The notes under the pieces: generated by a model
What the model was told of the DNA's origin: nothing
The model's input: only the letters and a program-made list of their open reading frames with translations
The model's database searches: none
Position numbers and translations under genes: made by a program
Shown: positions 17,748 to 60,943 of the stretch, in pieces
How the letters are laid out: every line of letters begins with the position of its first letter
Position numbering within the stretch: the stretch's first letter is position 1
Assembly (NCBI RefSeq): GCF_006345805.1
Contig: NC_043010.1
Location: 58,466,001-58,530,000, forward strand
DNA from: Octopus sinensis
Lineage: Eukaryota
Direction: 5' to 3'
DNA: 64,000 nucleotides

Positions 17748-17855
17748 CTCCATTCTATCATCCATGATAATCAAGTAGCAACATGTGGCAGTAGAGATGT
17801 GGACCAGAGGCTGTAACTGTTGTTGTTGTTGTTGTTATTGATCCTGCTGCAGTCA
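17748..17855 (-). promoter_or_regulatory. Leader (first) exon end of Pcdh unit C: ATG GAT GAT AGA ATG GAG | GTAGGT, with upstream CTGCTGCAGTCA motif
   Basis: ATG at 17765, donor GT at 17747-17746, motif at 17844-17855; same layout as 36214 and 60795. TSS not determinable. Confidence 0.65.
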
Positions 17856-18419
17856 ACCTTTTGGGTTTGTTTCTGGTGTTGTTGGTGTTGTTGTTGTTGT
17901 TGTTGTTGCTTAGCAACAGGTCAGCCCTGAACAAGCAGACGTCAGACCAAAAGGCGTTCTTGCAATGAGCATCTGTCTTTTGTTTTTAAATCCACTCTTT
18001 CATTGTGCAATGTGGTTGTTTTGTCTGAGATGATGGGATGTGTCTGAGGGAGATTTAGCTGCTATTTCTAGCAATTTGAATGTAGAGGCTCCCTTCTTGG
18101 TTTATGTCTGATTCTGTAGAAGAGAGGGCAGGAATACATTGCCCGCCTTTTTTTTTTTCTCTGTGTTTGTACAATATATATATATATATAACAGGGAGCT
18201 GGGTATAAAATGTATATATACATTATGACAATGATTATAAGCAATGTATGTGGACGTGTAGAAAGTTAACAATGTCATAGAAATAGCTTGAAACAGTGAT
18301 GTATACATACATGCCCATACTAATATATATATACAAATATATATGTATATATATGTGTATGCATGTGTGTGAACATATATATATATATATATATATATGT
18401 ATACACACATATATTTGTG

Positions 18420-18475
<56 letters not shown>

Positions 18476-19135
18476 TATACGTGTGTATGTATATATATAT
18501 ATATACACACATGTACATCTTGAGAGAGTTTTTACTTACCATAATAATATTGCGCATAGATATTTTTTTTTAACATCCAGTATGTATAATTTTAAATTTT
18601 TTGTGACAGAGTGTTTATTAAATTTCATTGAATTAATTTTGATTTTTGAAAGTTCAGGAGAAAGTCAATAATTATAAACACACATTCATATAGGAAATAT
18701 ATATACACACATATATATATACATACATAAACATACATGCATACATCCATTCACATATACATATACATACATATATATGCAAATGCATATATGCGTGTAT
18801 GTATGTATATATTTTATATTATTTGATATGAAAGGCAACCTTTTTAATAATTATCAATTATTTTTCTGTATTAAGACCAATTTTAATATTTTTTTTTCCC
18901 ATTTTCTTTTTAAAATCCATATACACGGAAATTTTACAAAATATCCGAAGGAAAGGTAAGTATGTCTCTAGCTTGTAGAGATAGTTGATAAAATAGTTTC
19001 CAGTGTGTGGGGAAGGGTATTGAAAGCAGACAACACGCAAACATTTATTACGCCAGATATAAAGATCAATTTCGGCAGATATTTCATAATTTTGTTATTA
19101 ATATATATATATGTACATAGATATACATAAATTCA

Positions 19136-19191
<56 letters not shown>

Positions 19192-21846
19192 ATACAATTC
19201 TTGTCGATGTAAGCATTTAATTTTGTTGTTGATATTATTGTTGTTGTTGGTGGTGTTTTTTCCTAATTGTTTTTTTTATGTAAGTATTTGTTTCTTTATT
19301 CATTATAGATATTTTCTTTTTTAAAAGGAAAAAAGACAAATCGTAAACGTAACCAATTATTTTGATCGATTAATGAAGCAACGTGGGCAATAAAATTTGA
19401 ACAGATCAATCCGATTGTTATCACTGATCTGTACAAAAAAATCTTAGATATTGGAATCAATCAATCAATAGAAAACAGTTCAATAAAAACAGATAATACA
19501 TTGATCTCTGCACATACAGATATATACATACATGCAAATATATATATATGTGTGTGTGTATATATATACATAAATATATGTAAATAATTATTTACACACA
19601 CACACGCATCCATATGTATTAATTCTTTGATAAACTGTTGCAGCTTATTTGTTGATGATGTTGCACTTGTTTCATCATAGATTTATCACAAACTCTTTCT
19701 CTCTCATCTCCCTCTTGCCCCTCTCTCTCTGTCTCTCTTTCTCTCTCTCTCTCTCTCATTATATCACTATATCTATCCTCCCTATTATTTTGTTTCCCTA
19801 TCAAGTTCATGTACGTATGTATATATATATATATGTGTATATATATGTATATGTGTATATATATGTATATGTGTATATATATATGTGTATATATATATGT
19901 GTGTGTGTGTGTATGTATCACAACACACCTTGTGTATGTGTATTCAATTTTGTTTGTTTTTATATGTATACACACACACACACACATATATATATATGCA
20001 TATATATTTGTGTATATGTATGTACATACATATGTATGTACGTATGCACATACATACATAGCTAGATAATGAACTGGGTGTATAGGTGTGTGTGTGCGTG
20101 CAATGATGTGGCAAGCAGTCGTTAAAATGATGAACTGGAGTGGAATAAGATTTATTCAAAGACGAGTGTGAGTGATGAAGCAGAAGAAAAATGGAGTCTG
20201 TGGGGGAACTCACAGACACACTCAGCTTTGAAGGAATCTTATACACACACACACACGTATGTGTATGTGTGAATGTATACATGCATATGTCTACATATGT
20301 ACCTGTGGATGTATACATGTATGGATGTATGTGTATGTATGCATGGTGATATTTGAATGCATGTAAGTAGGTATGTATGTTTGTATGCATGTATGTGTGT
20401 GTGTGTACGCATGTATGTATGCATGTCTATATAAATAGGTGCGTATGTGTGTAGAAAGGATTTTTCTGGCTTCCTAAGCACATTAACTTTTACACATTCA
20501 GTCAGTCATTTGTTTATGCATAAACACATACATACATACATGCATGCATACTTAAACACACATACATGCTTACATAGACACACATACATATATACACATG
20601 TATAGACATAAGCTCATATACATTCATACATACATACCTACTGCATTCAAACATAACCATGCATACACATACATATATACTAAAGGACATACATACACAT
20701 ACAAATACATATACACACACACATACATGTGCATATACATCCATAAAACATACCTTGAGACACACACACCAACCTATACATTCACCCATGCATGCATATA
20801 CACACATATATACATTCATATATCCTCCACCCATCGATCCATCTGTGCATGCACACATGCATACATATACTCATCTCCACATCCATATATCGTGCATTAC
20901 AGATACTCCTGTCAATACATTAGAGCAGAGAGAATCGGACACACAACTCCAGACACAAACTGCAGCCTACTCCCTGTTCTCTATTACTCCCTCTATTCTA
21001 TTGGTCCCCATACTCTGAGATGGACTGAAGAGAATATGTAAAGCATTGACAATTCTGGCTAGAATCCATGTTATCCTTACTGATCAACTAACAGAAGTAT
21101 GAAGGCCTTCTCATCCTCCTATGCAATAACCATGTGAAGGGTATAAAATAGAAGGCTGTATATAATATGATCTGTTGTGTAATCTATAACACTTCAGTGT
21201 GTTTATATTTAACTATGTAGGTCTGTGTGTGTGGTATACTATTTTGCAGTGTATATATGCCTGTTATATATGTTTAATGGGTATCCATATACACACATGT
21301 TCATACATGTGTGTATAAATGATCAGTTAATGCCTGCTTTATAATTTTATATATGAGTTTATGAACATATATATTTATCTGCATTTATACAAATATATGA
21401 TATATATTATACATATATATTCATATACATTAACACACACATGCATGCACAAATACACACACACAAACACACACACTCACACACACACCAATACAGGAAG
21501 CAATCTCTCTTTATCCCATTTATGCAAATTTTTCAATTTCTGTGGAGATTCTGGAATGGTTTTTCTAAGCCAAATAACCTGAGAGCATCCAAGGAAATTC
21601 CTCTTGTATAATTTTTTGTGTAAAAAATATTTAAAAAATAAACAGAAAAAATAATTGGAAGAAAAATGAATCATTAAGGTAAAAAATTGAAAAAAAAAAG
21701 AATATAAATAAAAAATAAATGATTAAAACAAGTTAATTAGGCAATTTGGTGAAAAGTGTTGCAGGAATGATGGAAGAAGTGTTGACAAAATAAGAGAATT
21801 AAGTAATGGAGAATGAATTTGGTCATTTGGTGCTGTGGTTTACCTA

Positions 21847-21870
21847 TTATCTTTTGATTCGAGTTGGTAA
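21847..21870 (-). CDS. Pcdh: Terminal coding micro-exon of Pcdh unit B (LPTRIKR*)
   Basis: Acceptor ccatttttctctttctctttcAG (21871-21872); TTA CCA ACT CGA ATC AAA AGA TAA TAG; phase 0 matches the unit B donor; paralogous copies at 37493 and 62620. Confidence 0.8.
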   Translation of the reverse strand, partial: LPTRIKR

Positions 21871-24480: not shown

Positions 24481-25361
24481 TTGTTAAAACAGGTGTTTGG
24501 TCTTCATCAAAAACTTAGAATCCTCTCCCTTTTTACTAAAACCTCAGGTTACATCTTGTATAGCCAGATCTACTGGGACCTATTTCCTATCTCACTCACT
24601 AATGCTCCCACAGTACAGTTTCCGGAGGGCCAGGTCTAATGGCCTATCTACTGGAACTTGGTTTCTATGTCCTTCACCAGAGCCTCTACCTTGGTGGAAT
24701 CAATGATTTAACAGTGACTGCTATGGAACTCCCTTATGGGCTCCTGGCAATGATCTCATAGACTAGAAGGGTCCTACCTGATTAGATGATCACAGCTTAT
24801 ACATATTCCTCATCACATAAACATGATACCAGTACAACATATAACTCTGATTTCTTTCCACTGACATCCCATCAACTTTGCTAAACCACAAAACTCAGTT
24901 GTGTTATTCATGCATTTCCTGTTGCACTTGCCACCATCTGCAACAAAGCTTATCCTTTGGCAGGCAATAACACTATCTTAACTTGCTGAAATTGTAACCG
25001 ATGTGCAATCTAGACACATCACCTCAAGCTGAAACAGATTCCAGGAACAGAGACCCTTAAAGCCTTCACAAATAACTACTTAAAAATACAAATAAAGGAA
25101 AACACAGGATACAGTGAAAACCTGTTGACCCAATTCTGGAAATATTAATATTCATAAAATATAATTTAAGGTGCACTATATAAAAATAACTGTAACAATA
25201 ACGATGTCAAGTGGTTAAATATATTCATCTCACATATCTCCTGACTTTTTATCATTTATACACACACACACACGCACATGTACACACTCACATACAGACA
25301 TATACACAGGTTTACATAAATATACATTAAATTATACTATATAATATATAATGCAACTTAC

Positions 25362-27782
25362 CAATATTGTGGTGGGTGGACTCTTCTCCAGGGTACCCAC
25401 GTTCGACCAATCAATCTGAGATTCATACAGCGGGTAGAAATCTTCCTTACATTCCACAAATGGCATGTTTCTATTATTCATCTCAGAAGAGTACCTCACT
25501 GGGGTACCAGGAATACTGCTGCTCTGACACGGTAAAGGTTGATCAATTCTGTTACATATAGCTGACCTATTAACACCTTTCCTAGTGCTCTTGGCAGAGC
25601 GAGACTGACCACTGCTACATTTCATAATACACAATGTGATCGACACTACAATCACCACAGATACTATTACAGCTGCTACTACAAGGATAATCAATAATGG
25701 TACGTCCAGTGTTCTGTTCTTCTCTAAGTGGACAGTCGGCATTGGTGCTGATGTCTTGTTAGTGACCCTTAATGACAAAGACACAGTAGTTGTGGCTGAC
25801 AACACTGGGCTTCCAGAATCCTTGACCACAAGCACCAGTTCGTATGAGCCAGCATCGTTGAGATGAGGTGCACGCGAGAAAGACATTTGACCAGTTAAAG
25901 AGTTGAGTGTAAACAAGCGTTTATTGTTACCGTCAAGTATTCCATATTTGAGGAACGCATTTAAATGACTGTCTCTGTCAGACGCTCTAATCACAGTGAT
26001 GGCATTGGTACTTTGCGGGTGGTAGTGGACATTGATATGGAAAGGGTCAGTTGTAGGGTAGATGAAATACGGATTATTGTCGTTTCTGTCTAAAACCTCA
26101 ACAACAACATTCGCTGTGTTATTCAACGACGGTTTACCATTGTCTTTGACAAAAACCTCAAACTTATACATGTCTTCTTCTTCTCTGTCCAATGGTATGT
26201 TGCTGGTAATAAAACCATAATCACTCACCTGGAACGGTATGTTATTTCTGTCTTTACTCAACAGTGAGAACGTCAGTTGACCAGCACTTGCCAGGTCTGG
26301 GTCAGTGGCATTGATAAAACCTATAGGAAAGTTTGCTTTACCATTCTCATAGGTGAGGAAGTGGAATGTATCTTTGGTAAATTGCGGTTGCACATCGTTC
26401 ACATCCATTACTTGGATTGAGATCTTTCTCTCTGTCTTTAAAGCAGGGCTTCCATTGTCTTCACACACAATTCTCATGTTAAAATGGTCTAATGTTTCTC
26501 TGTCAAGGGATTTCTTCAGAGTAATCTTGTATTCCTTTGATCCTAAATGTGAGAGGACAACTGTATCATGTTCTAATTTACAACTCACTTCTCCATTTGC
26601 TCCAACATCGTTGTCCACCACATTCACATAAGCTAGATAACTGCCCACTTTTGTCCCTTCGTAAATAGCTGCAGTGCCCTTCTTCAATTCGGACACAAAA
26701 TTTATATCAATTTCAGGAGCATGGTTCTTTTCATTGAGAACATTCACCCGTACAATGGCAAAGGAATTTAAGGATGGATTCCCTCCATCTTTGGCCTCGA
26801 CATATAATTCATAAATGCGATCTCTCTCTTTTGAGAAATTTTCTGTGATAAACAATTTGCCAGACTCTCTTTTTAATATATAACATTTTTTAGCTTTGTC
26901 TGGTGTTTCTGAACTGAAATAATAAGACACTTTACCATTATTGCCAGAATCTGGGTCTTTTGCAGACAATGTCAAAATAGGGTTGTTGTTAGGATGTGTA
27001 TTTTTGATGGAAATATTGTAAATATGTTTTGAAAAAACTGGTGAGTTATCATTCACATCATTTATTTTAATATGAACATGTAGAATTCCTTGTTTTGAAG
27101 GTTGCCCTCCATCTTTAGCTATCACTTCTAGATTGTAACTATCTTTGATTTCTCTGTCTAGTTTGTCTCCAAGAACAATTCCTATCTTTGCTCTTCCTGT
27201 GATGGTTTTTCTCACAGACAATATAAATGGGTCGTTAAATTGTTTCTTCAATTTATATGTAATTTCTGAGTTTTCCATTCCAACATCTCTGTCAATGGCA
27301 TCTGGAATTAATCTTTCGGCTCCTTCTCCATCATCTTCATCATACGTAACATTTATTTGTTTCTGAGGAAACTCAGGGCTGTGATCGTTAATGTCTTCTA
27401 TAATTACTTTGACTTTCAGAATCTTCATAAAAGACTTGGCCTTGTTTACAGCTATTTTAATGTATTTGAAACATTGTTTCCTCGGTTTGCACAGAGACTC
27501 GGCATCAATTGTGTGTGCCGTGTACAATTTACCATCTTTAGTGACATTGAACACCTTGGAACTATCTGTTCTTCGGTGCTGTATTTGATTAAATATAATG
27601 GACGTCTGCTCATGTGATTCCATATTCTCCAAGACGAGGGAATCGGCTGCAACATCTCCAATAAATGTTCCTGTAATGTCTTCATCTTTCAAATAATATA
27701 CAATATCTTCACACACAGTGCTTTGCCAGAACAGAGCGAAGATACTCAGAAGAAAGAACAATTGCGTTTCCCTTGTTTCCAT
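25362..27782 (-). CDS. Pcdh: Protocadherin unit B large exon (signal peptide, EC1-EC6, TM, cytoplasmic tail; 807 codons, 814 aa with the terminal exon)
   Basis: Signal peptide METRETQLFFLLSIFALFWQSTVC; cadherin motifs DINDHSP, LDRE, AxDGG, DVNDNSP, DVNDVQP, DRNDNNP; EC1 Cys-X5-Cys (CKPRKQC) typical of Pcdhs; one TM; donor TTG|GTAAGT at 25361; 5' acceptor atatttcAG at 27817-27818. Symbol is family-level only. Confidence 0.97.
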
Positions 27783-28261
27783 CCCTAGTTTTCAGATCAC
27801 TTCACAGCTCTGGCCCCTGAAATATAATAATGTACAGTTGATAGGGGAATAAATAGTCAGATAAACAATGACACACTAAATATACATCATGTAAATAGGT
27901 CCTGCGTAATATGTAATATGTTATATCATCATCGTTCAATGTCCGCTTTCCGTGCTAGCATGGCTAGGACGATGCAATGAGAGTGATATAAAGTCGTGTT
28001 ACACATAATATCAAATATGTAATATCCTATATAAACAACAAGAGAAAGAATGGAAAATAGGACAAGTAAATGCAGAGAAAGGATCCTTCATCAGTTGTCA
28101 GCTGCCTATCTACTCCTCATTTCAAGCATTCATAGAAAGACAACCGACAACTGATGAAGGATTCTTTCTTTGGGTTAGCTTGTTCTGTTTTACATTTTTC
28201 TCTCTCGTTGTTTACGTATTTCATGTTGTTTGCACCGTTAATGACGTCCTGTACCCACATA

Positions 28262-35540: not shown

Positions 35541-35924
35541 ATCAAAGAGCCACCACAACTATGGCTGCTCTGTGTATATATTTCACCGTAGTCTTCATCT
35601 ATGTTTTTAACATTGATTTCAATACAATTACAACACTTCATCTGCACATTGAGAGATGTTATCATTAATAAGAATAACAACAATAATAATAATGATAATC
35701 ACTGAAATATCTCACTGAACCAAGCAGAAATATTCCTCCGTGATTGAATATTACAATAATTACAGATATTTGATATTAATTTGCATTATTAGAAATGAAA
35801 CAATAGTTGAGGTAGGTGTTTGTCAGTGATGTAAGGGTCCTTTATAACGGTATCTTAGCATTTTCTCCCATCACAACATTTCATGAAATATGTGCAACTG
35901 CCTAGCTTTCTGTATATTTATATA
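35541..35924. repeat. 384-bp unique-looking segment duplicated at 60344-60727 (intron 1 of unit B)
   Basis: Direct alignment by eye: 2 mismatches, no gaps. Confidence 0.95.
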
Positions 35925-36213: not shown

Positions 36214-36404
36214 CTCCATTTTTCCATCCATAATCTGTGTGCATGTATATATATATATATATACTTCTGTGCATATATATGTGTGTAGTAGTATAGTCGT
36301 GTGTGGCGGTTTATGTGGTAGTAGGGCTATGGATCACAGGTTTTTACTACTGCTAGCTGCTACTGCTGTTGTTGTTACCGCTGCTGCTGCAGTCTGCTGC
36401 ACTC
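36214..36404 (-). promoter_or_regulatory. Leader exon end of Pcdh unit B: cagatt ATG GAT GGA AAA ATG GAG | GTAAGTCTA, with CTGCTGCAGTC motif
   Basis: ATG at 36231, donor at 36213-36208, motif at 36384-36394 (second near-copy 36394-36404). Confidence 0.7.
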
Positions 36405-37492: not shown

Positions 37493-37516
37493 TTATTTCT
37501 TGATTCGGGTGGGTAA
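37493..37516 (-). CDS. Pcdh: Terminal coding micro-exon of Pcdh unit A (LPTRIKK*)
   Basis: Acceptor ctatcttcttatcttccAG (37517-37518); TTA CCC ACC CGA ATC AAG AAA TAA; followed by GATGTCAC as in the 62620 copy. Confidence 0.8.
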   Translation of the reverse strand, partial: LPTRIKK

Positions 37517-41222: not shown

Positions 41223-41270
41223 CATGATGGATATTTAATACTATACATTTTGGATAATATATATATAATA

Positions 41271-41449
41271 ATAATTAAAAGTATCTAAACGATACCACCA
41301 TGCTAGAGATAGCAGTCAAAACTTGTCTCTAAAACCACATCATATATTCATCCAGCACCAGGTGCTGTATGAATTCCTGATGTGGTTTTAGAGTCAAGTT
41401 TTGACTGCTATCTCTAGCATGGTGGTATCTTTTAGATACCTTTAATTAT
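41271..41449. mobile_element. Fold-back MITE (almost entirely palindromic)
   Basis: gataccaccatgctagagatagcagtcaaaacttg...caagttttgactgctatctctagcatggtggtatc plus outer and inner paired segments. Confidence 0.75.
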
Positions 41450-41538
41450 AATTTTAATAATAATTACCTATAAGGTTTTTATTCCCATGCTATCCACTTG
41501 ATATGATTAACAATCTTATCCTTATTTATATATATATA

Positions 41539-45100: not shown

Positions 45101-45250
45101 GTTGGCGTTAGGAAGGGCATCCAGCCGTAGAAACACTGCCAGATTTGACTGGGCCTGATGAAGCCTTCTGGCTTCACAGACCCCAGTAGAACCGTCCAAC
45201 CCATGCTAGCATGGAAAACGGACGCTAAATGATGATGATGATGATGATGA
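42113..45250 (+). mobile_element. 5'-truncated young RTE-clade LINE (end of APE endonuclease, RT, PHD-type finger, 3' UTR, (ATG)n tail)
   Basis: SQIDYIL..EEC.PQHRLVV (APE end); GKAPGPSG, NYRGIKLL, QFGFVPGKST, FVDMEKAFD, GVHQGSVLSP, LLYADD, FRYLGD, GRGRPRKTW; frameshifts near 42490 and 44005; tail (ATG)n ends at 45250. Confidence 0.95.
44622..44910 (+). repeat. Three tandem copies (87, 101, 101 bp) within the RTE 3' UTR
   Basis: Units start at 44622, 44709 and 44810 (aaactctgcttgtgaagac...ccagtgycg). Confidence 0.9.
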
Positions 45251-45550
45251 AACAGTTGTAATTGGTTCAGCCTGCAAAAGGACTTAACTTGTTTCATGTA
45301 TTTATGCAATTAGGTTTGCATATATTTTTGTTATTTTGCAATAAATATGGAGGGGTATGTCACTGTCTGGAACATCGAAGGAACATAAGAAGTACTGCTA
45401 TAATTGAGGGATAGTCATATGTGGAATGGATCAATAGACAGGCTGATGTATGGAAGGAGAACAGATGTAGGGGGACAATGAGGGCCAATGTACATGTATA
45501 TATGGATGGATGGACGGATTTGTATGTATATCTATGTATATATGTATATG

Positions 45551-45594
<44 letters not shown>

Positions 45595-46080
45595 CTGAAA
45601 TTGTGAGGAGCATGGAATCACTCTTTACCCATGTTCTGGATATGAATAATATCGAGGGATGAGGTCCTGGTTTGGGAGTTCTGGGGGGTGATGAGCATGG
45701 ATTCACCCCATAATTACAATTATTCCTAGCTTTGTTCTGATCCTGAACCATAGTACCTGTCAGGGTTCCGTCTATGGGTTAAATAGATTTCCCAGGCACC
45801 TAGCGTAGCTAGGAGGGGGTACGGGCAGTTGTCCAACCCGCACAGCACTTTTAATGGGGCACACTTTTGGGTCTGCTCTAGGCAATATTTTTTTGTGTGG
45901 GGTGCTGAGGGGAAAAACAGAAGGGCCACCCTGGGTGGCACACACTAGCTACACTAGTGCCTGTTACTTTTTACAAAGCCATGGAGAAGGAACTCTTCTA
46001 GAAGATGGATACTCTGACATAAAACTTGCAGTCCAAATAATAGCAGCCATCTTGCAATGTTTGTCACTGGAATCACTTGA

Positions 46081-46301
46081 CCCTTTTGTTACCAACCTGG
46101 CTGAAACCGCCTCTGGCTCTGTAGTACAAATGTCTTGTTTTCAAAAGTTCTGAATTAAAATCTTCCACCAAACCTTAGTCACAATTTATGTTCCTAACAC
46201 TAGCTTAATGACAACTAAGTTATTTCACTAAATTCTTTGTTATATTTAAAGTAATTGAAAAAGATACTGAGCATCTCAAAATAAATAGAGTAACGAAAGG
46301 G
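46081..46301. mobile_element. piggyBac-like MITE
   Basis: TIRs cccttttgttac / gtaacgaaaggg; flanked on both sides by TTGA (46077-80, 46302-05). Confidence 0.6.
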
Positions 46302-46514
46302 TTGATGTGATTGAGAGAGAGGCATAAGTGTTGTACAAGCTTTTGTCAATTAAATCCAGTGGTATTCAGCTATTTCTCTATCACTTCATATCTGTCCACA
46401 TGGAAGGATGAAAGTGAATGAGAAACAATCAAGCTGAATGTGAGATGACTATCATCTGAAAAGATGAGACAAGCATCTTTTGTATGTATGTATGTATGTA
46501 TATATATATATATC

Positions 46515-46815
46515 ATGGACTCTCCCATCGGTAGACGATGTATGAAGGTTCGGTACTTTCTTGCCGAATGACCACACAGATGATTTGTTTATAGTGATCA
46601 AATATTTGTGTCCACATAAGCTCACTCCCTCCTTCAAATCGACATTACCTGTACAGGTGCACCAAGTGACATATGTCAGGTGACGAAATGATTGCAGAGC
46701 AACAAGAAATGAAGTGCTTTGCTCAAGAACACAATGCAATGCCCGGTCTGGGAATTGAGCCCATGATCTCACAATCAAGAGTGCAACACCATAACCACTA
46801 AGCCAGGCGCCTTCA
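46515..46815 (-). mobile_element. Second tRNA-derived SINE family, minus-strand copy
   Basis: Minus strand begins gaaggcgcctggcttagtgg...caattcccagaccgggc...tgtgttcttgagcaaagcactt, like 48081. Confidence 0.65.
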
Positions 46816-48080
46816 CATATATATGTGTGTGTGTTTGTGTTTATCATATATTTCATTATATGTATGTATGTATGTATATATCTATCGACATGTGTGTGTG
46901 TGTGTGTGTCTATATGGATATTTGTATGTTTTCATATATATCGTGTTTATATTAGCATTGCTGTCTCCATATCATCTCACCTGGATTTCTTTCAGAGCCA
47001 CTCTTTACACAGAATCCAAGTCCCCAGTAAAGACTTCAGGGCACTACTACATGTTTCCTATACTGAATATTTCTAGCTCTCACCTTTTGACTCTGTGTGT
47101 GTGTGACAGAGAGAGAGATAGAAAAAGAGTGAGAGAGAGAATATGCTCATAGCAAGAGAGAATGATTTGCAAATAGAAGACATGGAGTGATGAAAGCAAT
47201 AGAGAAAGAGAGAGAGAACAGCAAAGAGGCAGTGAGAGATTGGCACTTGTTTGGTTTTCTATGTATTTCATCAACCTTATTCTGACCTTTTTTATTACTT
47301 TATGTTTTGAATATCAAAGACTCAGATTCTGTCCCCATCACACCAAAATTTTTGAATTAATGAAAAATTAATTAAAACTTTTAAAAAATATTTTAACTAA
47401 TTAATTTTATTTTTATATTTTTAATTAAAAAGAAAAAGTTAATTAAAATTTCAGAGTTGTGCTTGTCTATCAAGTGAGTTGATCTGAGGCCATGCGTTTC
47501 AAGACCGAAGCTACTAAACTCTTGGAGAAACATTGTGTGAGACAGCAAAGAAGTTGAATTCACTTTAGATTGAAAGTATTTCATGAAGTGTCAAAATTTT
47601 CATTATATAACTGTGACCTGGTCACTGACACAGGGTCACTGTAACTAGGGAACCAGGTTCCAAATCATCATCATCACCACCTTCATCATCATTGTTCTTG
47701 TCATCATCATCCTTGCTGTCATCGTTTTTATTATCATCATCCTCGTTGTCATCTCATCAATGTTCTCATCCTTGTCATCATCGACATCCTCATCTCTGTT
47801 GTCGTCGTCATCAGCATCATCCTCATCATCGTCATTGTAATATCCTCTTTTCCAAGTTTGCATGGCTTAGATGGAGCTTATTGTGTTATATATCTTTTAT
47901 CTTTTACTTCTTTCAATCATTGAACTCTGGCCATGCTGGGGCACTACCATGAATAGTACTCATTCTACAAGGCTCTTTTTGTGCAAACTACTAAGTCACA
48001 TGGCTGTCAACAAACCAACACCAGTTAAGTGGTGATGGGGACAAACACACCTGATAAACACAAGTATATAAATCTGCAGT

Positions 48081-48398
48081 GAAGGCGCGTGGCTTATTGG
48101 TTTGGGCATTCGGCTCACGATCGTAAGGTTGTGAGTTCGATTCCCGGCGACGCGTTGTGTCCTTGAGCAAGACACTTTATTTCACGTTGCTCCAGTCCAC
48201 TCAGCTGGCAAATTGAGTTGTACTGTATTTCAAAGGGTCAGCCTTGTCACTCTCTGTGTCACGCTGATTATCCCCGAGAACTACGTTAAGGGTACACGTG
48301 TCTGTGGAATGCTCAGCCATTTGCACGTTAATTTCACGAGCAAGCTGTTCCGTTGATCGTATCAGCTGGGACCCTCGTCGTCGTAACCGGCGGAGTCT
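48081..48398 (+). mobile_element. tRNA-derived SINE (second family), young CpG-rich copy inserted into an older SINE
   Basis: Pol III A-box (tggcttattggtt) and B-box (gagttcgattccc), followed by the tgtgtccttgagcaagacact central domain. Confidence 0.75.
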
Positions 48399-48578
48399 TG
48401 TAAATCTGCAACATCATTCGTTCTGTCACAGCCAACCAAATTCACTCACAGGGCATTGATTGGCTGGATTGGAAGATCTTGCTGGAACTGAACTCAAAGC
48501 CATATGGTTGAGAAGCAAACGTTTTACCATTCAACCATGCCTGCATCTTTCTCTGTGTGTGTGTGCGTGTGTGTGTAT

Positions 48579-48609
<31 letters not shown>

Positions 48610-48630
48610 TGTATATATATATATACACAC

Positions 48631-48662
<32 letters not shown>

Positions 48663-48769
48663 GTATATATATATACACATATATATATACACATATATAT
48701 ATGTATATATATACACACATATATATATGTATATATATATACATATATATATATGTATATATATATGTG

Positions 48770-48850
<81 letters not shown>

Positions 48851-49259
48851 GTATGATGTGAGGCAGATAAGAGTATGTGAAGTATTCATCAGAGACCTGT
48901 CTGCTGACGTAAGCACACTCTGGCTTACGTACAGACTCTCATATTCTTCATCCTGCAACAACTACACTGCCTCCAGATGGGACACTTTGTACATCACATC
49001 TTGAACTGAAGGACCTTGAAAGCCCTGCTACATGAGGAAGTGGCTTCTAGCAAGACAGCACAAGGACAATGACATCTGTTTTCCTTTCATAGATGTGAGC
49101 AAGAGAAAGAGACGAACTCTCCTTATATGAAGATCAAAAAATGGGAGAATATTGCTGAGTAAAATGAATCTCAGTTGGTTTGAAATAATGATTTGTCCAT
49201 CTGTTCCATTAACTATGTGTTGATATTTAATACTGTATATTGTACATATATCTACATAT

Positions 49260-51480
49260 TGGAGCTCTTATTGTACTGAGCTGCAACGCCCAAACTGGCT
49301 CGAAAGTTATGCCTCTGGAGATGTGAACATTATACTTCTGAACATTCTGAATTCAATATGGACAGCATGTGCAGCATCGGTACCACTCAAGCACAAAAAA
49401 AACACCCAATAATGCAATTTGGGAGACTGGAGCAGTCTGACTTGTCAGGAAAGAATGCAGTAATGCTGAACAGGAATACAGAATGCACAAATCAGAGATC
49501 AACAGGAAAAAGCGCAATAGATCATCCAACCACCTCAAGCAGGTGACAAAAAAGGCAGTGCTTGAATTCGAACAGCGCATAGCAACCAACCCTGTTGGCA
49601 AAGTGTTCTGGAAGTATGTCTGTTCAAAACAGAGACCTCACTCTCCAGTTGGTCCCCTTCGCAATCCCCACACAGGACAGATTACTGGCAATCCCAAAGA
49701 ATGTGCAGAAATCATTGCTGGATGCTATGCAGGCATCTTTACTGTCGAAGATCGAAATGTTCCATCCCCATCACCACTGACACTGGACCCTATAACTACT
49801 ATGAAATTTACACCAGCAATGCTACAATGCCAACTTAAGAATAAACGCAACTATGCCTCTCCTGGTCTCGATGGTGTTACATACCTACTTCTCAAACATG
49901 GTGGGTACTTTCTTCTAAGCCAATTTTCTCTATTCTTCCAATTCTGTCTTGACAATGGTGTTACTCCAGAGCAGTGGAAAACTGCCAGTGTTATCCCTCT
50001 GTTCAAAAAAGGTGACCGCACATCGCCTGTCAACTATTGCCCTGTTAGTCTTACTAGCTGCATCACCAAACTGATGGAATCCTGTGTCAGGGAAACCCTC
50101 TGGAACTTCTGGAAGTCTCACAGCCTCATCCAGCTGTCACAATTTGGTTTTATTCCTAACTCCAGCTGCTGTAATCAACTCATCGAGTTTGTTGAGGACA
50201 TTACCCAAATCACTGATCGCAGATCCTGGGTGGATGTTGTTTACCTGGACTTTGTTAAGGCTTTTAATTCTGTGCCACACAAAAGACTTATGGTGGAACT
50301 CTCTGCGATGGGTGTAAGAGACTATCTCTATAACTGGTTGAAGTCCTTTATTATCGGCTGAAAAGAGTTTGTCACAGTTCTAGGACAGCACTCTTCACCC
50401 TATGAGATGACATCTGGTGTACCACAGGGATCTGTTCTTGGTCCCCTTTTATTTGTTGCATATGTTAATGACATAGATGCCAACTTAAAGAATGCCACAG
50501 TGCTGAAATATGCAGATGACATCAAGCTGTACATTGAAATAAAGAGGTCAGATCCTGTACACTATAGATCTGTATTGCAATCAGACCTGGACACAATGCA
50601 GCAGTGGATCATGGACTGACAACTCAAGCTGGCTGTGGACAAATGTACCACCATGCATTTTGAGAGGAAACACTCAGCGTCTACTTACTCCCTCCACAAC
50701 ACTAATCTCAAAAAGTCTTCGCGTGAACGTGACCTGGGTGTTATTGTCGACAGTGATTTGCGTTGGACAAAACACATCGCTAAAATTGCCAATAAGGCTG
50801 AGGGTGTCTTGGCATCACTCACCAAGTCCTTTGCGAGCCGCTCTCCGGCTATCTATCTGCGGCTTTATATAGCTATGGTGCGACCTAACCTGGAATTTGC
50901 ATCACCGGTCTGGAACCCCTATCTTGCCCAGGATATTAATCGTCTGGAAGCCATTCAGTGACGTGCAACCAAAAGAATACCCTCCATTGGGCATTTGCCA
51001 TATTCTGAACGCCTTACTTCCGTGGGCATGGATACACTGAAACTCCGATGTCTGGCAGCTGACTTGGCAGACACCCATAAAATTATTAACCATCTTACAA
51101 ACAATAACTCTGAGCACCTTTTCAAACTCCACCTGTCTAACACCCATGGACATGTTTACAAAGTCAGAAAACAGCACAGCTCCCATGACTTCAGGAAACA
51201 TTTTTTCACGCTGAGGGTTGCTGAAGCATGGAACAAACTGCTGGCATCAGTTGTTAGTTGTCGGAGCACTGCATCCTTCAAAACTTCCATGCTTCCTGAG
51301 ATTCGCCAACACTACACCTGATTTTCTCCCCGCCCCATACACACGCAAGCATGTATCTGACTCATACACTGTTCACTTCCCAGACATTTGTACATTACTG
51401 CACATGCTTTATACGCACTTTTGACAAGTTGTGGTGCACCTGAGCACTGTATGCAATAATTTCATTATTATTATTATTAT
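49260..51480 (+). mobile_element. CR1-group LINE, 5'-truncated, inactivated by nonsense codons
   Basis: ORFs at 49483, 50407, 50635 and 50995 share one frame, separated only by TGA stops; SPGLDGV, YCPVSLTS, VYLDFVKAF, SGVPQGSVLGPLLF, YADD, ERDLGV; (ATT)n tail ends at 51480. 5' edge approximate. Confidence 0.93.
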
Positions 51481-52413: not shown

Positions 52414-52469
<56 letters not shown>

Positions 52470-54356: not shown

Positions 54357-54481
54357 CACACATATACATATATAATATAAAATAATAGACATAGAAAGTT
54401 ACATGGATAGACAGACAGATAAACACAGAAACATATAGATAGATAAATAGACAGATAGAAAGATTATATAATGCAACTTAC

Positions 54482-56907
54482 CAATATTGTATTGGGTGGA
54501 CTCTTCTCCAGGGTACCCACGTTTGACCAATCAATCTGAGACTCATACTGCGGGTAGAAATCTTCCTTACATTCCACAAATGGCATGTTTCTATTATTCA
54601 TCTCAGAAGAGTACCTCACTGGGGTACCAGGAATACTGCTGCTCTGACACGGTAAAGGTTGATCAATTCTGTTACATATAGCTGACCTATTAACACCTTT
54701 CCTAGTGCTCTTGGCAGAGCGAGACTGACCACTGCTACATTTCACAATACACAGTGTGATCGACACTACAATCACCACAGATACTATTACAGCTGCTACT
54801 ACAAGGATAATCAATAATGGTACGTCCAGTGTTCTGTTCTTCTCTAAGTGGACAGTCGGCATCGGTGATGATGTCTTGTTAGTGACCCTTAATGACAAAG
54901 ACACAGTAGTTGTGGCCGACAACACTGGGCTTCCAGAATCCTTGACCACAAGCACCAGTTCGTATGAGCCAGCATCGTTGAGATGAGGTGCACGCGAGAA
55001 AGACATTTGACCAGTTAAAGAGTTGAGTGTAAACAAGCGTTTATTGTTACCGTCAAGTATTCCATATTTGAGGAACGCATTTAAATGACTGTCTCTGTCA
55101 GACGCTCTAATCACAGTGATGGCATTGGTACTTTGCGGGTGGTAGTGGACATTGATATGGAAAGGGTCAGTTGTAGGGTAGATGAAATACGGATTATTGT
55201 CGTTTCTGTCTAAAACCTCAACAACAACATTCGCTGTGTTATTCAACGACGGTTTACCATTGTCTTTGACAAAAACCTCAAACTTTACATGTCTTCTTCT
55301 TCTCTGTCCAATGGTATGTTGCTGGTAATAAAACCATAATCACTCACCTGGAACGGTATGTTATTTCTGTCTTTACTCAACAGTGAGAACGTCAGTTGAC
55401 CAGCACTTGCCAGGTCTGGGTCAGTGGCATTGATAAAACCTATAGGAAAGTTTGCTTTACCATTCTCATAGGTGAGGAAGTGGAATGTATCTTTGGTAAA
55501 TTGCGGTTGCACATCATTCACATCCATTACTTGGATTGAGATCTTTCTCTCCGTCTTTAAAGCAGGGCTTCCATTGTCTTCACACACAATTCTCATGTTA
55601 AAATGGTCTAATGTTTCTCTGTCAAGGGATTTCTTCAGAGTAATCTTGTATTCCTTTGATCCTAAATGTGAGAGGACAACTATATCATGTTCTAATTTAC
55701 AACTCACTTCTCCATTCGCTCCAACATCGTTGTCCACCACATTCACATAAGCTAGATAACTGCCCACTTTAGTTCCTTCATAAATAGCTGCAGTGTCCTT
55801 CTTCAATTCAGACACAAAATTGATTCCTATTTTGGGGGGATGGTTCTTTTCATTGAGAACATTCACCCGTACAATGGCAAAGGAATTTAAGGATGGATTC
55901 CCTCCATCTTTGGCCTCCACATACAATTCATAAATGCGATCTCTCTCTTTTGAGAAATTTTCTGTGATAAACAGTTTTCCGGAATGTTTTTTTAAAATAT
56001 AACATTTTTTAGCTTTGTCTGGTGTTTCTGAACTGAAATAATAAGACACTTTACCATTATTGCCAGAATCTGGGTCTTTTGCAGACAATGTCAAAATGGG
56101 GTTGTTGTTAGGATGTGTATTTTTGATGGAAATATTGTAAATATGTTTTGAAAAAACTGGTGAGTTATCGTTTACATCATTTATTTTAATATGAACATGT
56201 AGAATTCCTTGTTTTGAAGGTTGCCCTCCATCTTTAGCTATCACTTCTAGATTGTAACTATCTTGTATCTCTCTGTCTAGTTTGTCTCCAAGAACAATTC
56301 CTATCTTTGCTCTTCCTGTGATGGTTTTCCTCACAGACAATATAAATGGGTCGTTAAATTGTTTCTTCAATTTATATGTAATTTCTGAGTTTTCCATTCC
56401 AACATCTCTGTCAATGGCATCTGGAATTAATCTTTCGGCTCCTTCTCCATCATCTTCATCATACGTAACATTTATTTGTTTCTGAGGAAACTCAGGGCTG
56501 TGATCGTTAATGTCTTCTATAATTACTTTGACTTTCAGAATCTTCATAAAAGACTTGGCCTTGTTTACAGCTATTTTAATGTATTTGAAACATTGTTTCC
56601 TCGGTTTGCACAGAGACTCGGCATCAATTGTGTGTGCCGTGTACAATTTACCATCTTTAGTGACATTGAACAACTGGGAACTTTCCATCCATTCTTGCTG
56701 AAGTTGGTTATATGTTAGTAGATCTCTGTCTGTCAGAGATCCACTGTCACCAAGCATGGCATCAGCAGCAACATCTCCAATAAATGTTTGGGGACTACTT
56801 TCTTCGTCGACATGGTACTCGAGGTCAATTGAAATGCAGGAGTGTAGTAATGCAACCAAAATATTTATTTGAATGATCAACTGTCGACCTGGCGTTCCTC
56901 CTTCCAT
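54482..56907 (-). pseudogene. Pcdh: Protocadherin unit A large exon with a 1-bp deletion at 55285/55286 (true pseudogene allele or assembly error); 816 aa if repaired
   Basis: ATG at 56907 (MEGGTPGRQLIIQINILVALLHSCIS; the ORF-track start at 56988 is TTG). ATG TAT AAG of unit B reads ATG TAA AG here, giving a stop in EC5. The remainder (54482-55284) continues in the shifted frame to donor TTG|GTAAGT at 54481. Confidence 0.92.
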
Positions 56908-57059
56908 CACTTTGCTTAGTACAACACTGAGACATGTAATTCCATATATGGTAACTGGAACAAAAGGAACAGCAGTGGTCTCTCCCAAAATGATGATATT
57001 GAAGGCATAATGTTGAAAGGTATTAGGTATAATAAAGTGGGAAGAATAATAGATACCAA

Positions 57060-57103
57060 GTGGACATTAAGTGGACATCAGGTAGACATCATGTAGACAT
57101 CAG
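57060..57103 (-). repeat. 11-bp x4 tandem repeat upstream of the unit A start codon
   Basis: GTGGACATTAA GTGGACATCAG GTAGACATCAT GTAGACATCAG on the + strand, immediately inside the acceptor ttttccttttcttgcAG (57110-57111). Confidence 0.9.
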
Positions 57104-57312
57104 ATTGATCTGCAAGAAAAGGAAAAAGCTTGACATTAAAATTACCTGCCACGTTAGCCATTGTTAGTTCACATTAGTAGTCATCATACAGGGAAGTCTA
57201 TGGACCCCCTACACATATTTATTTACCTTCAACTGTACATATGTGTGTGTGTTTGTGTGTGTATGCATGTGTGTGTATACATATATATATATATATACAT
57301 ACATATTTATAT

Positions 57313-57343
<31 letters not shown>

Positions 57344-59456: not shown

Positions 59457-59500
<44 letters not shown>

Positions 59501-59968
59501 TGTGTGTGGTGTGTGGTGTGTGCATGCACATTCATCCATAAATATATCTATGAATATATTCATCCATCTTAAAGACACAAGACCAAATCGTTTTATGATG
59601 AGAAAGATGCAACCAAGTTATTATCATTGGGCCATCAAAGATTCACTTTAATCAGATGAAATTATGAAGTTTAGAAGAAATACAGAACCTTAAATACATC
59701 TTTCTGAGTTTTTGTTGTTATAAAATATGGTGGAAAATGCAGAAGGAGAGAGAATGAGTTTTACTGTTTCTAACATGGCTGCCTTCATTTTTGTTGGTGA
59801 CAGCAGAGATTAATAACCACAAGGGAAAGTTTAGTGTTTCTGTCACAACGTTTACAAAATAACTAGAGTAAAATGATACACACACACACACAAACATATA
59901 TATATGTGCATACATATCCATAGACATATATATATATGTGTGTGTGTGTATACACACACAGTATTATC

Positions 59969-60001
<33 letters not shown>

Positions 60002-60343
60002 ATCATCATCATCATTTTAAGACCTATTTTTCCATGCTTGTATGGGTAACATAGGAAAACTATATGTTAAATAAATGATTATAATAATGTATATCTATAT
60101 ATTCATATATATGTGTGTGTTTTTATGTCTATATGTGCATATACATATGTATGTAAGTGAGTATGTCTACATTTTTTTCATTTTTGTCAGAAATAAAAGT
60201 GTTAAACATACCTATTTCTATGAAGGGAATACATACATACATATATATATATGTGTGTGTATATACATATATATATATATTATATATATATATATATATA
60301 TACATACATGAATCATATATAAAATATATATGAGCCAATTCTT

Positions 60344-60727
60344 ATCAAAGAGCCACCACAACTATGGCTGCTCTGTGTATATATTTCACCGTAGTCTTCA
60401 TCTATGTTTTTAACATTGATTTCAATACAATTACAACACTTCATCTGCACATTGAGAGATGTTATCATTAATAAGAATAACAACAATGATAATAATGATA
60501 ATCACTGAAATATCTCACTGAACCAAGCAGAAATATTCCTCCGTGATTGAATATTACAATAATTACAGATATTTGATATTAATTTGCATTATTAGAAATG
60601 AAACAATAGTTGAGGTAGGTGTTTGTCAGTGATGTAAGGGTCCTTTATAACGGTATCTTAGCATTTTCTCCCATCACAACATTTCATGAAATATGTGCAA
60701 CTGCCTATCTTTCTGTATATTTATATA
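60344..60727. repeat. 384-bp segment duplicated at 35541-35924 (intron 1 of unit A)
   Basis: 2 mismatches versus the unit B copy. Confidence 0.95.
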
Positions 60728-60794
60728 TTTGTCGGACAATAATGTGTTTCTAGGAAACGAAAATGTGAATAATCCAAGATGGGTGTAGACTTAC

Positions 60795-60943
60795 TTTTAT
60801 TGCCTGATCCATAATCTGGAGCTGTTGGCAGCTGAGTGTGACAGTCTGGGGAAATGTGTAGCAGGTTGTAAAAAAAGTGTGTTGCAGTTGTTGATAATGC
60901 GTGTGGTCGTGGCTGCTGCTGCTGTTGCAGTCTGCTGCAGTCA
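60795..60943 (-). promoter_or_regulatory. Leader exon end of Pcdh unit A: cagatt ATG GAT CAG GCA ATA AAA | GTAAGTCTA, with CTGCTGCAGTCA motif
   Basis: ATG at 60812, donor at 60794-60789, motif at 60932-60943. Confidence 0.7.

What the first reader, a model, noticed from the sequence alone, without database searches (positions are those of the whole stretch)
17748..60812. Conserved 6-codon 'MD' leader reading frame that becomes a splice-junction uORF in all three units
Seen: at three places an ATG-GAT in strong context (A at -3, G at +4) sits exactly 18 nt before a GT donor: MDDRME (17765), MDGKME (36231), MDQAIK (60812). A and B share CAGATTATGGAT and GTAAGTCTA although the surrounding exon has diverged. 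Spliced to the best acceptors these frames stop almost at once: MDDRME-R*, MDGKME-GPEL* (19 nt before the unit B ATG) and MDQAIK-INLMST*. They cannot fuse to the main ORF in B because of an in-frame TGA at 27794-27792, and I found no good in-frame acceptor in A. Inference: a positionally conserved uORF that throttles Pcdh translation (reinitiation or leaky-scanning control), or a relic first coding exon kept under selection.
Basis: partly seen in the sequence, partly recalled or inferred. Interest (0 to 1): 0.75.

Follow-up and report, generated by a model that had tools for sequence, protein, structure and literature searches.

The report
Conserved upstream start codon in octopus protocadherin leaders
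Each gene copy in this octopus protocadherin array has a short non-coding first exon carrying a start codon 18 bases before the splice site, making a tiny upstream reading frame that has been kept since octopus and argonaut diverged and probably damps translation, which is an ordinary kind of control element.

Summary
ATGGAT-N12-GTRRGT occurs three times, all on the minus strand (17765, 36231, 60812), against 0.02 expected. The window matches Octopus sinensis LOC115219374, a tandem protocadherin array.

Each site ends a leader exon lying between one unit's terminal micro-exon (LPTRIKK*) and the next unit's main exon. The same architecture occurs in O. vulgaris, O. bimaculoides and Argonauta hians, in four paralog types, while the surrounding introns no longer align.

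ATTATGGAT and the donor are the most conserved bases. After splicing, the frames stop after 10-13 codons in Octopus, 9-19 nt before the main ATG in E and B types. The junction MDQAIK|INLMST* appears verbatim in an O. vulgaris gene model.

The peptide is not conserved: every changed codon seen in the E-type comparison is non-synonymous. Conservation also runs about 25 nt into the intron. A sequence-independent repressive uORF is the best reading (about 0.55). A nucleotide-level promoter or splicing element is a serious rival. A relic coding exon is not supported.

Units A and C look degenerate, and C's acceptor is unsupported. The element is confined to this subfamily. This is a new member of a known kind, of modest interest.

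The parts
60795..60940 (-). Leader (first, non-coding) exon of unit A. The 5' limit is approximate and set at conserved block 1 (CTGCAGCAGACTGCAACAGCAG). An internal cryptic acceptor at 60845 is used in an O. vulgaris read-through model.
   Evidence: The O. vulgaris model CAI9733542.1 translates 60845-60795 as TVTLSCQQLQIMDQAIK.
60810..60812 (-). Upstream ATG of unit A in context attATGG. It starts MDQAIK, 18 nt before the donor GT at 60794-60793.
57089..57109 (-). Start of unit A's main exon (acceptor cttgcag|ATCAAT). It carries the uORF tail INLMST and the stop TGA at 57091-57089. The main ATG lies 181 nt further on, at 56907.
   Evidence: The same junction appears in O. vulgaris L004 (16410>20162) with canonical GT/AG.
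54482..57109 (-). Unit A main exon. It ends ...SPPNTIL|gtaagt. The ORF is broken by a 1-nt deletion that gives ATG TAA at 55290-55285.
37493..37516 (-). Terminal micro-exon LPTRIKK* of unit A, 17 kb downstream of its main exon. Leader B begins about 1.1 kb after it.
   Evidence: Retroelement ORFs lie in the intervening intron.
36214..36402 (-). Leader exon of unit B. It holds block 1 (GTGCAGCAGACTGCAGCAGCAG), block 2 (GATCCATAGCCCTACTACCACA), a (TA)n run, then CAGATTATGGATGGAAAAATGGAG. The 5' limit is approximate.
36229..36231 (-). Upstream ATG of unit B in context attATGG. It starts MDGKME, with a second in-frame ATG at codon 5. The donor GT is at 36213-36212.
27802..27816 (-). Start of unit B's main exon (acceptor atatttcag|GGGCCA). 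It carries the uORF tail GPEL and the stop TGA at 27804-27802, 19 nt before the main ATG at 27782.
   Evidence: The acceptor is identical in O. bimaculoides, and one is present at the same distance (34 nt) in Argonauta.
25362..27816 (-). Unit B main exon: an intact protocadherin with five cadherin-domain hits, ending ...SPPTTIL|gtaagt.
21847..21870 (-). Terminal micro-exon LPTRIKR* of unit B.
   Evidence: It matches the C-terminus of the O. vulgaris ortholog CAI9733544.1.
17748..17854 (-). Leader exon of unit C: GACTGCAGCAGG, a (CAA)n run, block 2 (GGTCCACATCTCTACTGCCACA), then ATCATGGATGATAGAATGGAG. The 5' limit is approximate.
17763..17765 (-). Upstream ATG of unit C in context atcATGG. It starts MDDRME. 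The donor GT is at 17747-17746 (gtaggt).
13686..14153 (-). Unit C remnant: only the C-terminal 155 codons of a protocadherin main exon. No N-terminal part and no verified acceptor.
62620..62643 (-). Terminal micro-exon LPTRIKK* of the preceding (E-type) unit, whose main exon lies beyond the window. It shows that leader A sits in the intergenic space.

Best explanation
Each repeat unit of this protocadherin array is a three-exon gene:
- a non-coding leader exon of roughly 110-190 nt;
- a 2-8 kb intron;
- a main exon with a short 5' leader, then the signal peptide, cadherin domains and transmembrane segment, ending ...SPP(N/T)TIL;
- a terminal micro-exon, LPTRIK(K/R)*.

The leader exon ends with an AUG in strong context (A at -3, G at +4), exactly 18 nt before the 5' splice site. 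Most lineages have a second in-frame AUG at codon 5.

In the spliced mRNA this makes a junction-spanning uORF of 10-13 codons in Octopus. It stops 9-19 nt before the main AUG in E and B types, and 181 nt before it in A.

Inferred mechanism: scanning ribosomes initiate at the upstream AUG and translate the short frame. The spacer to the main AUG is very short, so few reinitiate, and protocadherin output from leader-containing mRNAs is damped. The effect would depend on the act of translation, not on the peptide made.

Shown here: the sequence architecture, its conservation, the conserved splice sites, and use of the A junction in an annotated model.
Inferred: that the TSS lies upstream of the AUG, that ribosomes initiate there, and that this represses the main ORF.
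For: - Non-random occurrence: 3 observed against 0.02 expected.
- Orthologous and paralogous leaders carry ATGGAT 18 nt before GT. O. vulgaris E type: MDETME; O. vulgaris A type: MDQAIK. O. bimaculoides: MDETME, MDQTIK, MDGKME, MDDRTE. Argonauta hians: MDQIME, MDKTME, MDGNIK.
- Between Octopus and Argonauta, only the main exon (83%), the terminal exon and the leader blocks (81-90%) still align. The introns do not.
- Across 7 lineage representatives, ATGGAT is invariant and -3 to -1 nearly so. A run of 6 invariant columns arises in 0.17% of column shuffles.
- 12 of the 16 invariant columns in the 342-column alignment lie within 27 nt around the ATG and donor.
- The donor consensus is kept in all copies, and acceptors are conserved 33-37 nt before the main ATG in E and B types.
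- The E-type uORF is 13 codons with a conserved TAA in all six copies from three species.
- The junction MDQAIK|INLMST* appears in CAI9733542.1 with canonical splice sites. That annotation drew on Iso-Seq and RNA-seq transcript assemblies (PMC10700109).
- Other ATGs in the leaders all have a pyrimidine at -3, whereas the conserved one has A in all but Argonauta B.
- Leaders lie 1.1-4 kb downstream of the previous unit's terminal exon, so they are first exons in intergenic space.
Against: - No TSS, junction-read or ribosome data for this locus could be reached. No Logan transcript exists for this subfamily.
- The only model that includes a leader uses it as an internal exon of a read-through transcript.
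- The first 25 nt or so of the intron are as conserved as the uORF in the E type (84%). Positions -2, -1, +5 and +6, which initiation does not need, are invariant too.
- Every changed codon in the E-type comparison between Octopus and Argonauta is non-synonymous. Nothing marks the frame itself as selected.
- In Argonauta B the context is weak (T at -3). There the uORF is 21 codons and overlaps the main ATG.
- O. sinensis versus O. bimaculoides divergence inside the uORF (3 changes in 54 nt) equals the flanking neutral rate of about 5%.
- Units A and C are probably not working genes.
Confidence: 0.55

Rival explanations
1. The constraint is on nucleotides, not on translation. On this view the block ATTATGGAT...AATGGAG|GTRAGTCTACAYCYAT is one of two things. 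It may be a promoter-proximal or first-intron transcription-factor site, for example two ATGGA (CCAT-core) half-sites 12 nt apart. Or it may be a splicing signal spanning the exon-intron border. The uORF would then be a by-product.
For: - Conservation runs across the donor about 25 nt into the intron at the same level as the uORF in the E type (21/25 against 15-16/18).
- Bases flanking the ATG that initiation does not require (-2, -1, +5, +6) are invariant.
- Changed codons in the E-type comparison are all non-synonymous.
- ATGGA occurs twice in register, 12 nt apart.
- From my own knowledge, not tested: the complement of the B-type copy reads CTCCATTTT, which resembles a YY1-type core.
Against: - In the oldest comparisons (E, A, B, C types) the intron part is lost. 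What stays invariant is the ATG with its context and the donor.
- The second ATGGA is lost in three lineages while the first is never lost.
- No conserved RNA structure: 0 predicted pairs. No Rfam match.
- No factor can be named or tested with these tools.
Confidence: 0.3
2. The frame is genuinely coding. Three versions were considered: a first coding exon of an N-terminally extended protocadherin (or its relic); a C-terminal tail of the preceding gene in read-through mRNAs; or a small peptide read through the unspliced donor (MDxxMEVSLHL...).
For: - CAI9733542.1 translates the A leader as the tail ...NTIL-TVTLSCQQLQIMDQAIK-INLMST*.
- In Octopus E units the leader frame equals the main frame, because the exon-2 leader is 33 nt.
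- Read-through peptides look alike at their start, MDxxMEVSLHL.
Against: - An in-frame stop separates the leader from the main ATG in every unit.
- The exon-2 leader length is 33, 34, 37 or 202 nt, so the frame relation is not conserved.
- The main ATG is followed directly by a hydrophobic, signal-peptide-like stretch (read by eye, no predictor run).
- The internal acceptor is specific to A.
- Read-through frames are broken by a 1-nt indel (O. vulgaris against O. bimaculoides, E type) and a 13-nt indel (O. sinensis against O. bimaculoides, B type).
- No synonymous bias was seen.
- The canonical terminal exon LPTRIKK* is conserved as far as Argonauta.
Confidence: 0.07
3. There is no selection. 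The three copies are alike only because the units are recent tandem duplicates or are homogenised by gene conversion.
For: - The gene bodies of A and B are 96.5% identical, and a 384-nt intron block is 99.5% identical.
- E-type leaders within a species are identical.
- O. sinensis and O. bimaculoides differ by only about 5% everywhere.
Against: - Outside three short blocks, the A, B and C leaders are too diverged for blastn to align.
- Leader types are orthologous across species. B type shares ATGGATGGAAA in Octopus and Argonauta. E type shares CAATGGAGGTRAGTCTACAT.
- Octopus and Argonauta introns do not align, yet the ATG, the spacing and the donor persist in both E and B types.
Confidence: 0.05

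Closest known systems
Position-conserved, sequence-independent upstream ORFs in animal 5' leaders (short uORFs that lower main-ORF translation by capturing scanning ribosomes)
   Same: - AUG in strong context upstream of the main AUG.
- Short frame of 10-13 codons ending just before the main start.
- The start codon is conserved while the peptide is not.
- Short spacer, which predicts poor reinitiation.
   Different: - Translation and repression are not demonstrated here.
- The uORF spans an exon junction at a fixed 18 nt from the donor.
- Conservation also covers neighbouring bases and the start of the intron.
Conserved-peptide uORFs (peptide-dependent ribosome stalling)
   Same: An upstream frame conserved over a long evolutionary distance, with M-D at positions 1-2 invariant.
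   Different: - Positions 3-4 and the exon-2 part vary freely.
- All observed codon changes in the E-type comparison are non-synonymous.
- Length and stop position differ between paralog types.
- The defining feature, peptide conservation, is not met.
Vertebrate clustered protocadherin variable-exon promoters (one promoter with a conserved sequence element in front of each variable exon)
   Same: - Tandem units, each with its own conserved upstream element lying between units.
- Gene conversion homogenises the 3' part of the large exon while the N-terminal cadherin domain stays distinct.
   Different: - Here the conserved element is, or includes, a separate spliced leader exon 2-8 kb upstream.
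- There are no shared constant exons; each unit has its own terminal micro-exon.
- No sequence similarity to the vertebrate element was tested or claimed.

Membership tests
Upstream ORF (uORF) of a 5' leader | An AUG lies upstream of the main AUG within the mature mRNA (TSS upstream of it, and the exon retained after splicing). | tested here: inconclusive
   - The donor and acceptor are conserved.
- The exon is included in the transcript-informed O. vulgaris model CAI9733542.1, but as an internal exon.
- A first exon ending 18 nt after the AUG needs a TSS upstream of it.
- No direct TSS or read data could be reached.
Upstream ORF (uORF) of a 5' leader | The frame ends before the main start, or overlaps it out of frame, so it does not extend the main protein. 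| tested here: met
   
- E type: 13 codons, stop 9-13 nt before the main ATG.
- A type: 12 codons, stop 181 nt before.
- B type, Octopus: 10 codons, stop 19 nt before.
- B type, Argonauta: 21 codons, overlapping the main ATG out of frame.
Upstream ORF (uORF) of a 5' leader | The upstream AUG is conserved between species beyond neutral expectation. | tested here: met
   - Invariant in 11 of 11 aligned leaders from four species and four paralog types.
- Introns between Octopus and Argonauta do not align.
- Run of invariant columns: P about 0.002 by column shuffling.
Upstream ORF (uORF) of a 5' leader | Ribosomes initiate at the upstream AUG, and the main ORF output changes when it is removed. 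| not testable with these tools
   Needs ribosome profiling and reporter assays.
Conserved-peptide uORF | The amino-acid sequence is conserved, with synonymous changes in excess. | tested here: not met
   - First-exon peptides are MDETME, MDQIME, MDKTME, MDQAIK, MDGKME, MDGNIK and MDDRME.
- Exon-2 tails differ.
- Only one synonymous change was seen (GAT>GAC in O. bimaculoides B).
First coding exon / alternative N-terminus of the protocadherin | The leader AUG is in frame with the main ORF after splicing, with no intervening stop. | tested here: not met
   - Stops are TAA (E), TGA (A) and TGA (B).
- A TGA in the main frame at 27794-27792 lies directly upstream of the B start.
Structured RNA element | A conserved secondary structure with covarying pairs, or a match to a known RNA family. 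| tested here: not met
   - RNAalifold on 9 leaders gave 0 pairs.
- No Rfam match at gathering score in the whole window.

The most novel reading that the evidence does not exclude
The leader with its invariant upstream AUG is a dedicated translational gate for this one concertedly evolving protocadherin array. On this reading, mRNAs from any chosen unit are made but stay poorly translated until reinitiation or leaky-scanning conditions change. That would add a post-transcriptional layer to protocadherin isoform choice in octopus neurons, one that vertebrate clusters (which lack a spliced leader) do not have.
Probability: 0.15. Interest if true: 0.6.

Novelty: new member of a known kind. Interest (0 to 1): 0.3.

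Why it matters
Octopus protocadherins expanded independently of the vertebrate clusters, and how their expression is controlled is largely unknown. This work defines the gene structure of one array: leader exon, main exon and terminal micro-exon.

It also finds a non-coding element retained since the Octopus-Argonauta split, centred on an upstream start codon. That gives a concrete, cheap target for reporter and ribosome-profiling tests of translational control.

The work also corrects the current annotation. The 4660-residue RefSeq model at this locus is a fusion of six units. Conserved uORFs are common in animal mRNAs, so the finding is useful rather than surprising.

Tried and rejected
- **Exact look-up of the unit B protein for transcripts:** not on record. 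The subfamily's clusters contain only genome-annotation proteins and no Logan transcript.
- **Logan contigs of other protocadherins (L008-L012):** these proved to be unspliced genomic DNA. L013 looks like a cDNA with a CAG-rich, ATG-free 5' leader. Its similarity to the leaders is only low-complexity and not significant.
- **RefSeq XP_036365280.1 junctions as evidence for acceptors:** rejected. Each fused segment begins right after an in-frame stop at a non-AG position. The last unit is B residues 1-707 joined to the C fragment.
- **O. sinensis isoform XP model P0011 (MDYLYY...):** not a leader. Its ATG lies inside the 3' end of the upstream main exon.
- **Orthologous comparison O. sinensis versus O. 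bimaculoides as a selection test:** uninformative. Everything is 94-96% identical.
- **Read-through small-peptide idea (MDxxMEVSLHL...):** rejected because of frameshifting indels between close species.
- **Conserved RNA structure:** none. **Rfam:** no match.
- **Longer ORFs on either strand across the leaders:** none shared by the three copies.
- **Wider survey:** no leader-like hit upstream of the neighbouring Argonauta gene (L007). In a 108-kb O. sinensis cluster of another subfamily (L003) there was only one loose motif hit, about 43 kb upstream of the nearest downstream protocadherin ORF.
- **Literature:** searches found nothing on octopus protocadherin uORFs or leader exons.


Full report
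**1. What the window is**

The minus strand carries tandem protocadherin units.
- Unit B has an intact 816-codon ORF (25332-27782) with cadherin domains.
- Unit A (54464-56988) is 96.5% identical to B over 2.3 kb but has a diverged N-terminus.
- Unit C is only a 409-nt C-terminal fragment (13746-14154).

Long stretches of the Octopus sinensis RefSeq protein XP_036365280.1 (LOC115219374) match the window's translations exactly:
- 540 residues of A;
- residues 1-707 of B;
- all 156 codons of the C fragment.

The window is therefore that locus or an identical copy of it.

**2.

The three sites read exactly as described.
- ATGGAT-N12-GTRRGT occurs 3 times against 0.02 expected, all on the gene strand.
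- Each ATG has A at -3 and G at +4.
- The strings CAGATTATGGAT and GTAAGTCTA are shared by the 60812 and 36231 copies.

**3. Gene structure**

Models from O. vulgaris and Argonauta hians end ...SPP(N/T)TIL-LPTRIK(K/R)*. In the window the main exons end at canonical donors:
- A at 54482 (TTG|gtaagt);
- B at 25362 (TTG|gtaagt).

Terminal micro-exons lie at 62643-62623, 37516-37496 and 21870-21850. Each ATGGAT site therefore sits in intergenic space, 1.3-4 kb after the previous unit's last exon and 3-8 kb before the next main exon. This is the position of a first exon with its own promoter.

The main exons begin at good acceptors:
- 57109 in unit A (cttgcag|ATCAAT);
- 27816 in unit B (atatttcag|GGGCCA).

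The B acceptor is identical in O. bimaculoides. An acceptor sits at the same distance, 34 nt before the ATG, in Argonauta.

**4. Related loci**

I fetched the orthologous arrays from:
- O. vulgaris (L001, L004);
- O. bimaculoides (L005);
- Argonauta hians (L002, L006).

There are four leader types.

| Type | Units | Species and uORF first six codons |
|---|---|---|
| E | MEVGC..., upstream of this window | Octopus MDETME; Argonauta MDQIME, MDKTME |
| A | window 60812 | O. sinensis and O. vulgaris MDQAIK; O. bimaculoides MDQTIK |
| B | window 36231 | Octopus MDGKME; Argonauta MDGNIK |
| C | window 17765 | O. sinensis MDDRME; O. bimaculoides MDDRTE |

- In every case ATGGA(T/C) lies exactly 18 nt before GT.
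- The Argonauta B copy was found by a profile search (E = 1.4e-12).
- It had escaped the exact pattern because its donor reads GTAAGC.

**5. Is this selection or shared descent?**

O. sinensis and O. bimaculoides are 94-96% identical throughout these regions, introns included. Their agreement says nothing; there are 3 changes in 54 nt of uORF.

Octopus against Argonauta is informative. In a whole E-type unit, only these parts still align:
- the main exon (83%);
- the terminal exon (87%);
- the leader blocks (81% and 90%).

The introns do not align.

- Leader types are orthologous between the two genera, so the E and B leaders have evolved separately since before that split.
- Aligning 11 leaders gives 16 invariant columns out of 342. 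Twelve of them fall within 27 nt around the ATG and the donor.
- In an ungapped stack of 7 lineage representatives, ATGGAT is invariant and -3 to -1 (ATT) nearly so.
- A run of six invariant columns arises in 0.17% of column shuffles.

The sequence containing the ATG is under purifying selection.

**6. The spliced products**

| Type | uORF | Length | Stop relative to main ATG |
|---|---|---|---|
| E, Octopus | MDETME followed by INSQDMI*, ISSRDMI* or IKPRDMI* | 13 codons | 9 nt before |
| E, Argonauta | MDQIME or MDKTME followed by IQTEDTI* or IQPEDTI* | 13 codons | 13 nt before |
| A | MDQAIK followed by INLMST* | 12 codons | 181 nt before |
| B, Octopus | MDGKME followed by GPEL* | 10 codons | 19 nt before |
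| B, Argonauta | MDGNIK followed by 15 codons | 21 codons | overlaps the main ATG out of frame |

- All six E-type copies across three species keep the 13-codon length and the TAA.
- The main ATGs have G at -3 and G at +4.

The A junction is not only a prediction. The O. vulgaris protein CAI9733542.1 ends ...SPPNTIL-TVTLSCQQLQIMDQAIK-INLMST*, with canonical GT/AG at all three introns. That annotation combined Iso-Seq and RNA-seq transcript assemblies with PASA updates (PMC10700109).

In that model the leader is an internal exon of a read-through transcript. The transcript skips the upstream unit's own terminal exon and enters the leader at an A-specific acceptor (window 60845). This supports use of the donor and of acceptor 57109, but it does not fix the TSS.

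**7. What argues for a translational role**

- The ATG is never lost, although the in-frame ATG at codon 5 is lost in three lineages.
- The context is strong everywhere except Argonauta B.
- The few other ATGs in the leaders all have a pyrimidine at -3.
- The frame always ends before or just over the main start.
- A first exon that ends 18 nt after the ATG can hardly start downstream of it.

Established scanning rules then predict two things. Most ribosomes would start at the upstream AUG. A 9-19 nt spacer would allow little reinitiation. The main ORF would therefore be damped. This last step is inference.

**8. What argues against it, or for a rival**

- The peptide is not conserved. Positions 3-4 vary at all six bases.
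- Every codon change seen between Octopus and Argonauta E types is non-synonymous.
- Conservation does not stop at the donor. The first 25 nt of the E-type intron are 84% identical between the genera.
- This intronic stretch is not coding, because close species differ there by 1-nt and 13-nt indels.
- Bases at -2, -1, +5 and +6 are invariant, although initiation does not need them.
- ATGGA occurs twice, 12 nt apart.

A DNA-level or splicing element therefore remains a serious alternative. I found no conserved RNA structure and no Rfam match.

**9. Rejected readings**

- **Relic or alternative first coding exon.** In-frame stops are present everywhere. The exon-2 leader is 33, 34, 37 or 202 nt long, so the frame relation to the main ORF is not conserved. 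The main ATG is followed at once by a hydrophobic, signal-peptide-like stretch (read by eye; no predictor was run).
- **Pure duplication or gene conversion.** The Argonauta comparison contradicts it.
- **General feature of cephalopod protocadherins.** A 108-kb O. sinensis cluster of another subfamily and the neighbouring Argonauta gene lack it.

**10. Caveats on the three window units**

- Unit A has a 1-nt deletion that creates ATG-TAA at 55290-55285. Its 202-nt exon-2 leader also carries several further ATGs.
- Unit C has no main exon, and the proposed acceptor at 14550 has no support.
- Only unit B looks like a working gene here.

**11. Verdict**

This is a real, conserved leader exon with a junction-spanning uORF, confined to one protocadherin subfamily.
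- The uORF reading is the best explanation, at about 0.55.
- The nucleotide-element rival stands at about 0.3.
- Conserved uORFs are common, so this is a new member of a known kind and of modest interest.
- I found no paper describing it.

Noticed in passing
window 25345-27669 versus 54465-56788; Argonauta proteins P0002 versus P0003: Concerted evolution with a sharp boundary. Units A and B are 96.5% identical from about codon 38 onward. Their signal peptides, 5' leaders and leader exons stay distinct, and each has its own Argonauta counterpart. In Argonauta the B-type and E-type proteins are also virtually identical from residue 367 to the end and mosaic before that. Gene conversion seems to maintain a 'constant' C-terminal part without shared exons.
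   Followed up: partly
window 55285-55290 (minus strand): Unit A reads GAC ATG TAA AGT where unit B reads GAC ATG TAT AAG. This 1-nt deletion gives a premature stop, so unit A is either a pseudogene or an assembly error. The O. vulgaris ortholog model also lacks its N-terminal part (P0122 starts at MKILKVK).
   Followed up: partly
whole window; RefSeq XP_036365280.1 (LOC115219374, 4660 aa): The RefSeq model fuses six tandem units. Each junction starts right after an in-frame stop at a non-AG position. The last unit joins B residues 1-707 to the C fragment. It is an annotation artefact and should be split into three-exon genes.
   Followed up: yes
window 62620-62643, 37493-37516, 21847-21870 (minus strand): Seven-codon terminal micro-exons, LPTRIK(K/R)*, one per unit, conserved as far as Argonauta (LPTRIKK/LPTRLKK). 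Unit A's lies 17 kb from its main exon.
   Followed up: yes
window 39941-50361 (plus strand): Retroelement ORFs with reverse-transcriptase domains (42485-44023, RVT_1 E = 2e-32 plus a sub-threshold PHD-finger hit; 49483-50361, RVT_1) lie inside unit A's last intron. This explains the intron's length.
   Followed up: partly
window 35541-35924 versus 60344-60727: A 384-nt block is 99.5% identical in the first introns of units B and A. It starts 290 nt and 67 nt after the respective donors. The cause may be a recent conversion tract, a duplication or an assembly artefact. In O. bimaculoides the B copy falls in a run of N.
   Followed up: no
L001 7225-7250, L006 7909-7933 and 14808-14832; window 60770-60794: The first 25 nt or so of intron 1 (GTRAGTCTACAYCYATSTT) are conserved between Octopus and Argonauta E types and Octopus A at about 84%. 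That is well beyond the donor consensus, and the stretch is not coding.
   Followed up: partly
window 57040-57100 (minus strand): Unit A's exon-2 5' leader holds four tandem copies of ATGTCYAC(NN..). They add several out-of-frame ATGs ahead of the main start. The array is conserved in O. bimaculoides.
   Followed up: no
L003 10001-10047 and about 78070 (O. sinensis, another protocadherin cluster); L004 12424>16360: Annotated read-through isoforms splice the donor at the end of one unit's main exon into the next unit's leader or main-exon acceptor (P0011, an 886-aa model, CAI9733542.1). Whether this is real transcription across units or an annotation artefact is open.
   Followed up: no
L013 1-182 (Logan contig from SRR25158139): An apparent spliced cDNA of a distant protocadherin paralog has a 182-nt 5' leader that starts with a CAG-rich run and has no upstream ATG. 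The resemblance to leader block 1 is low-complexity only.
   Followed up: partly
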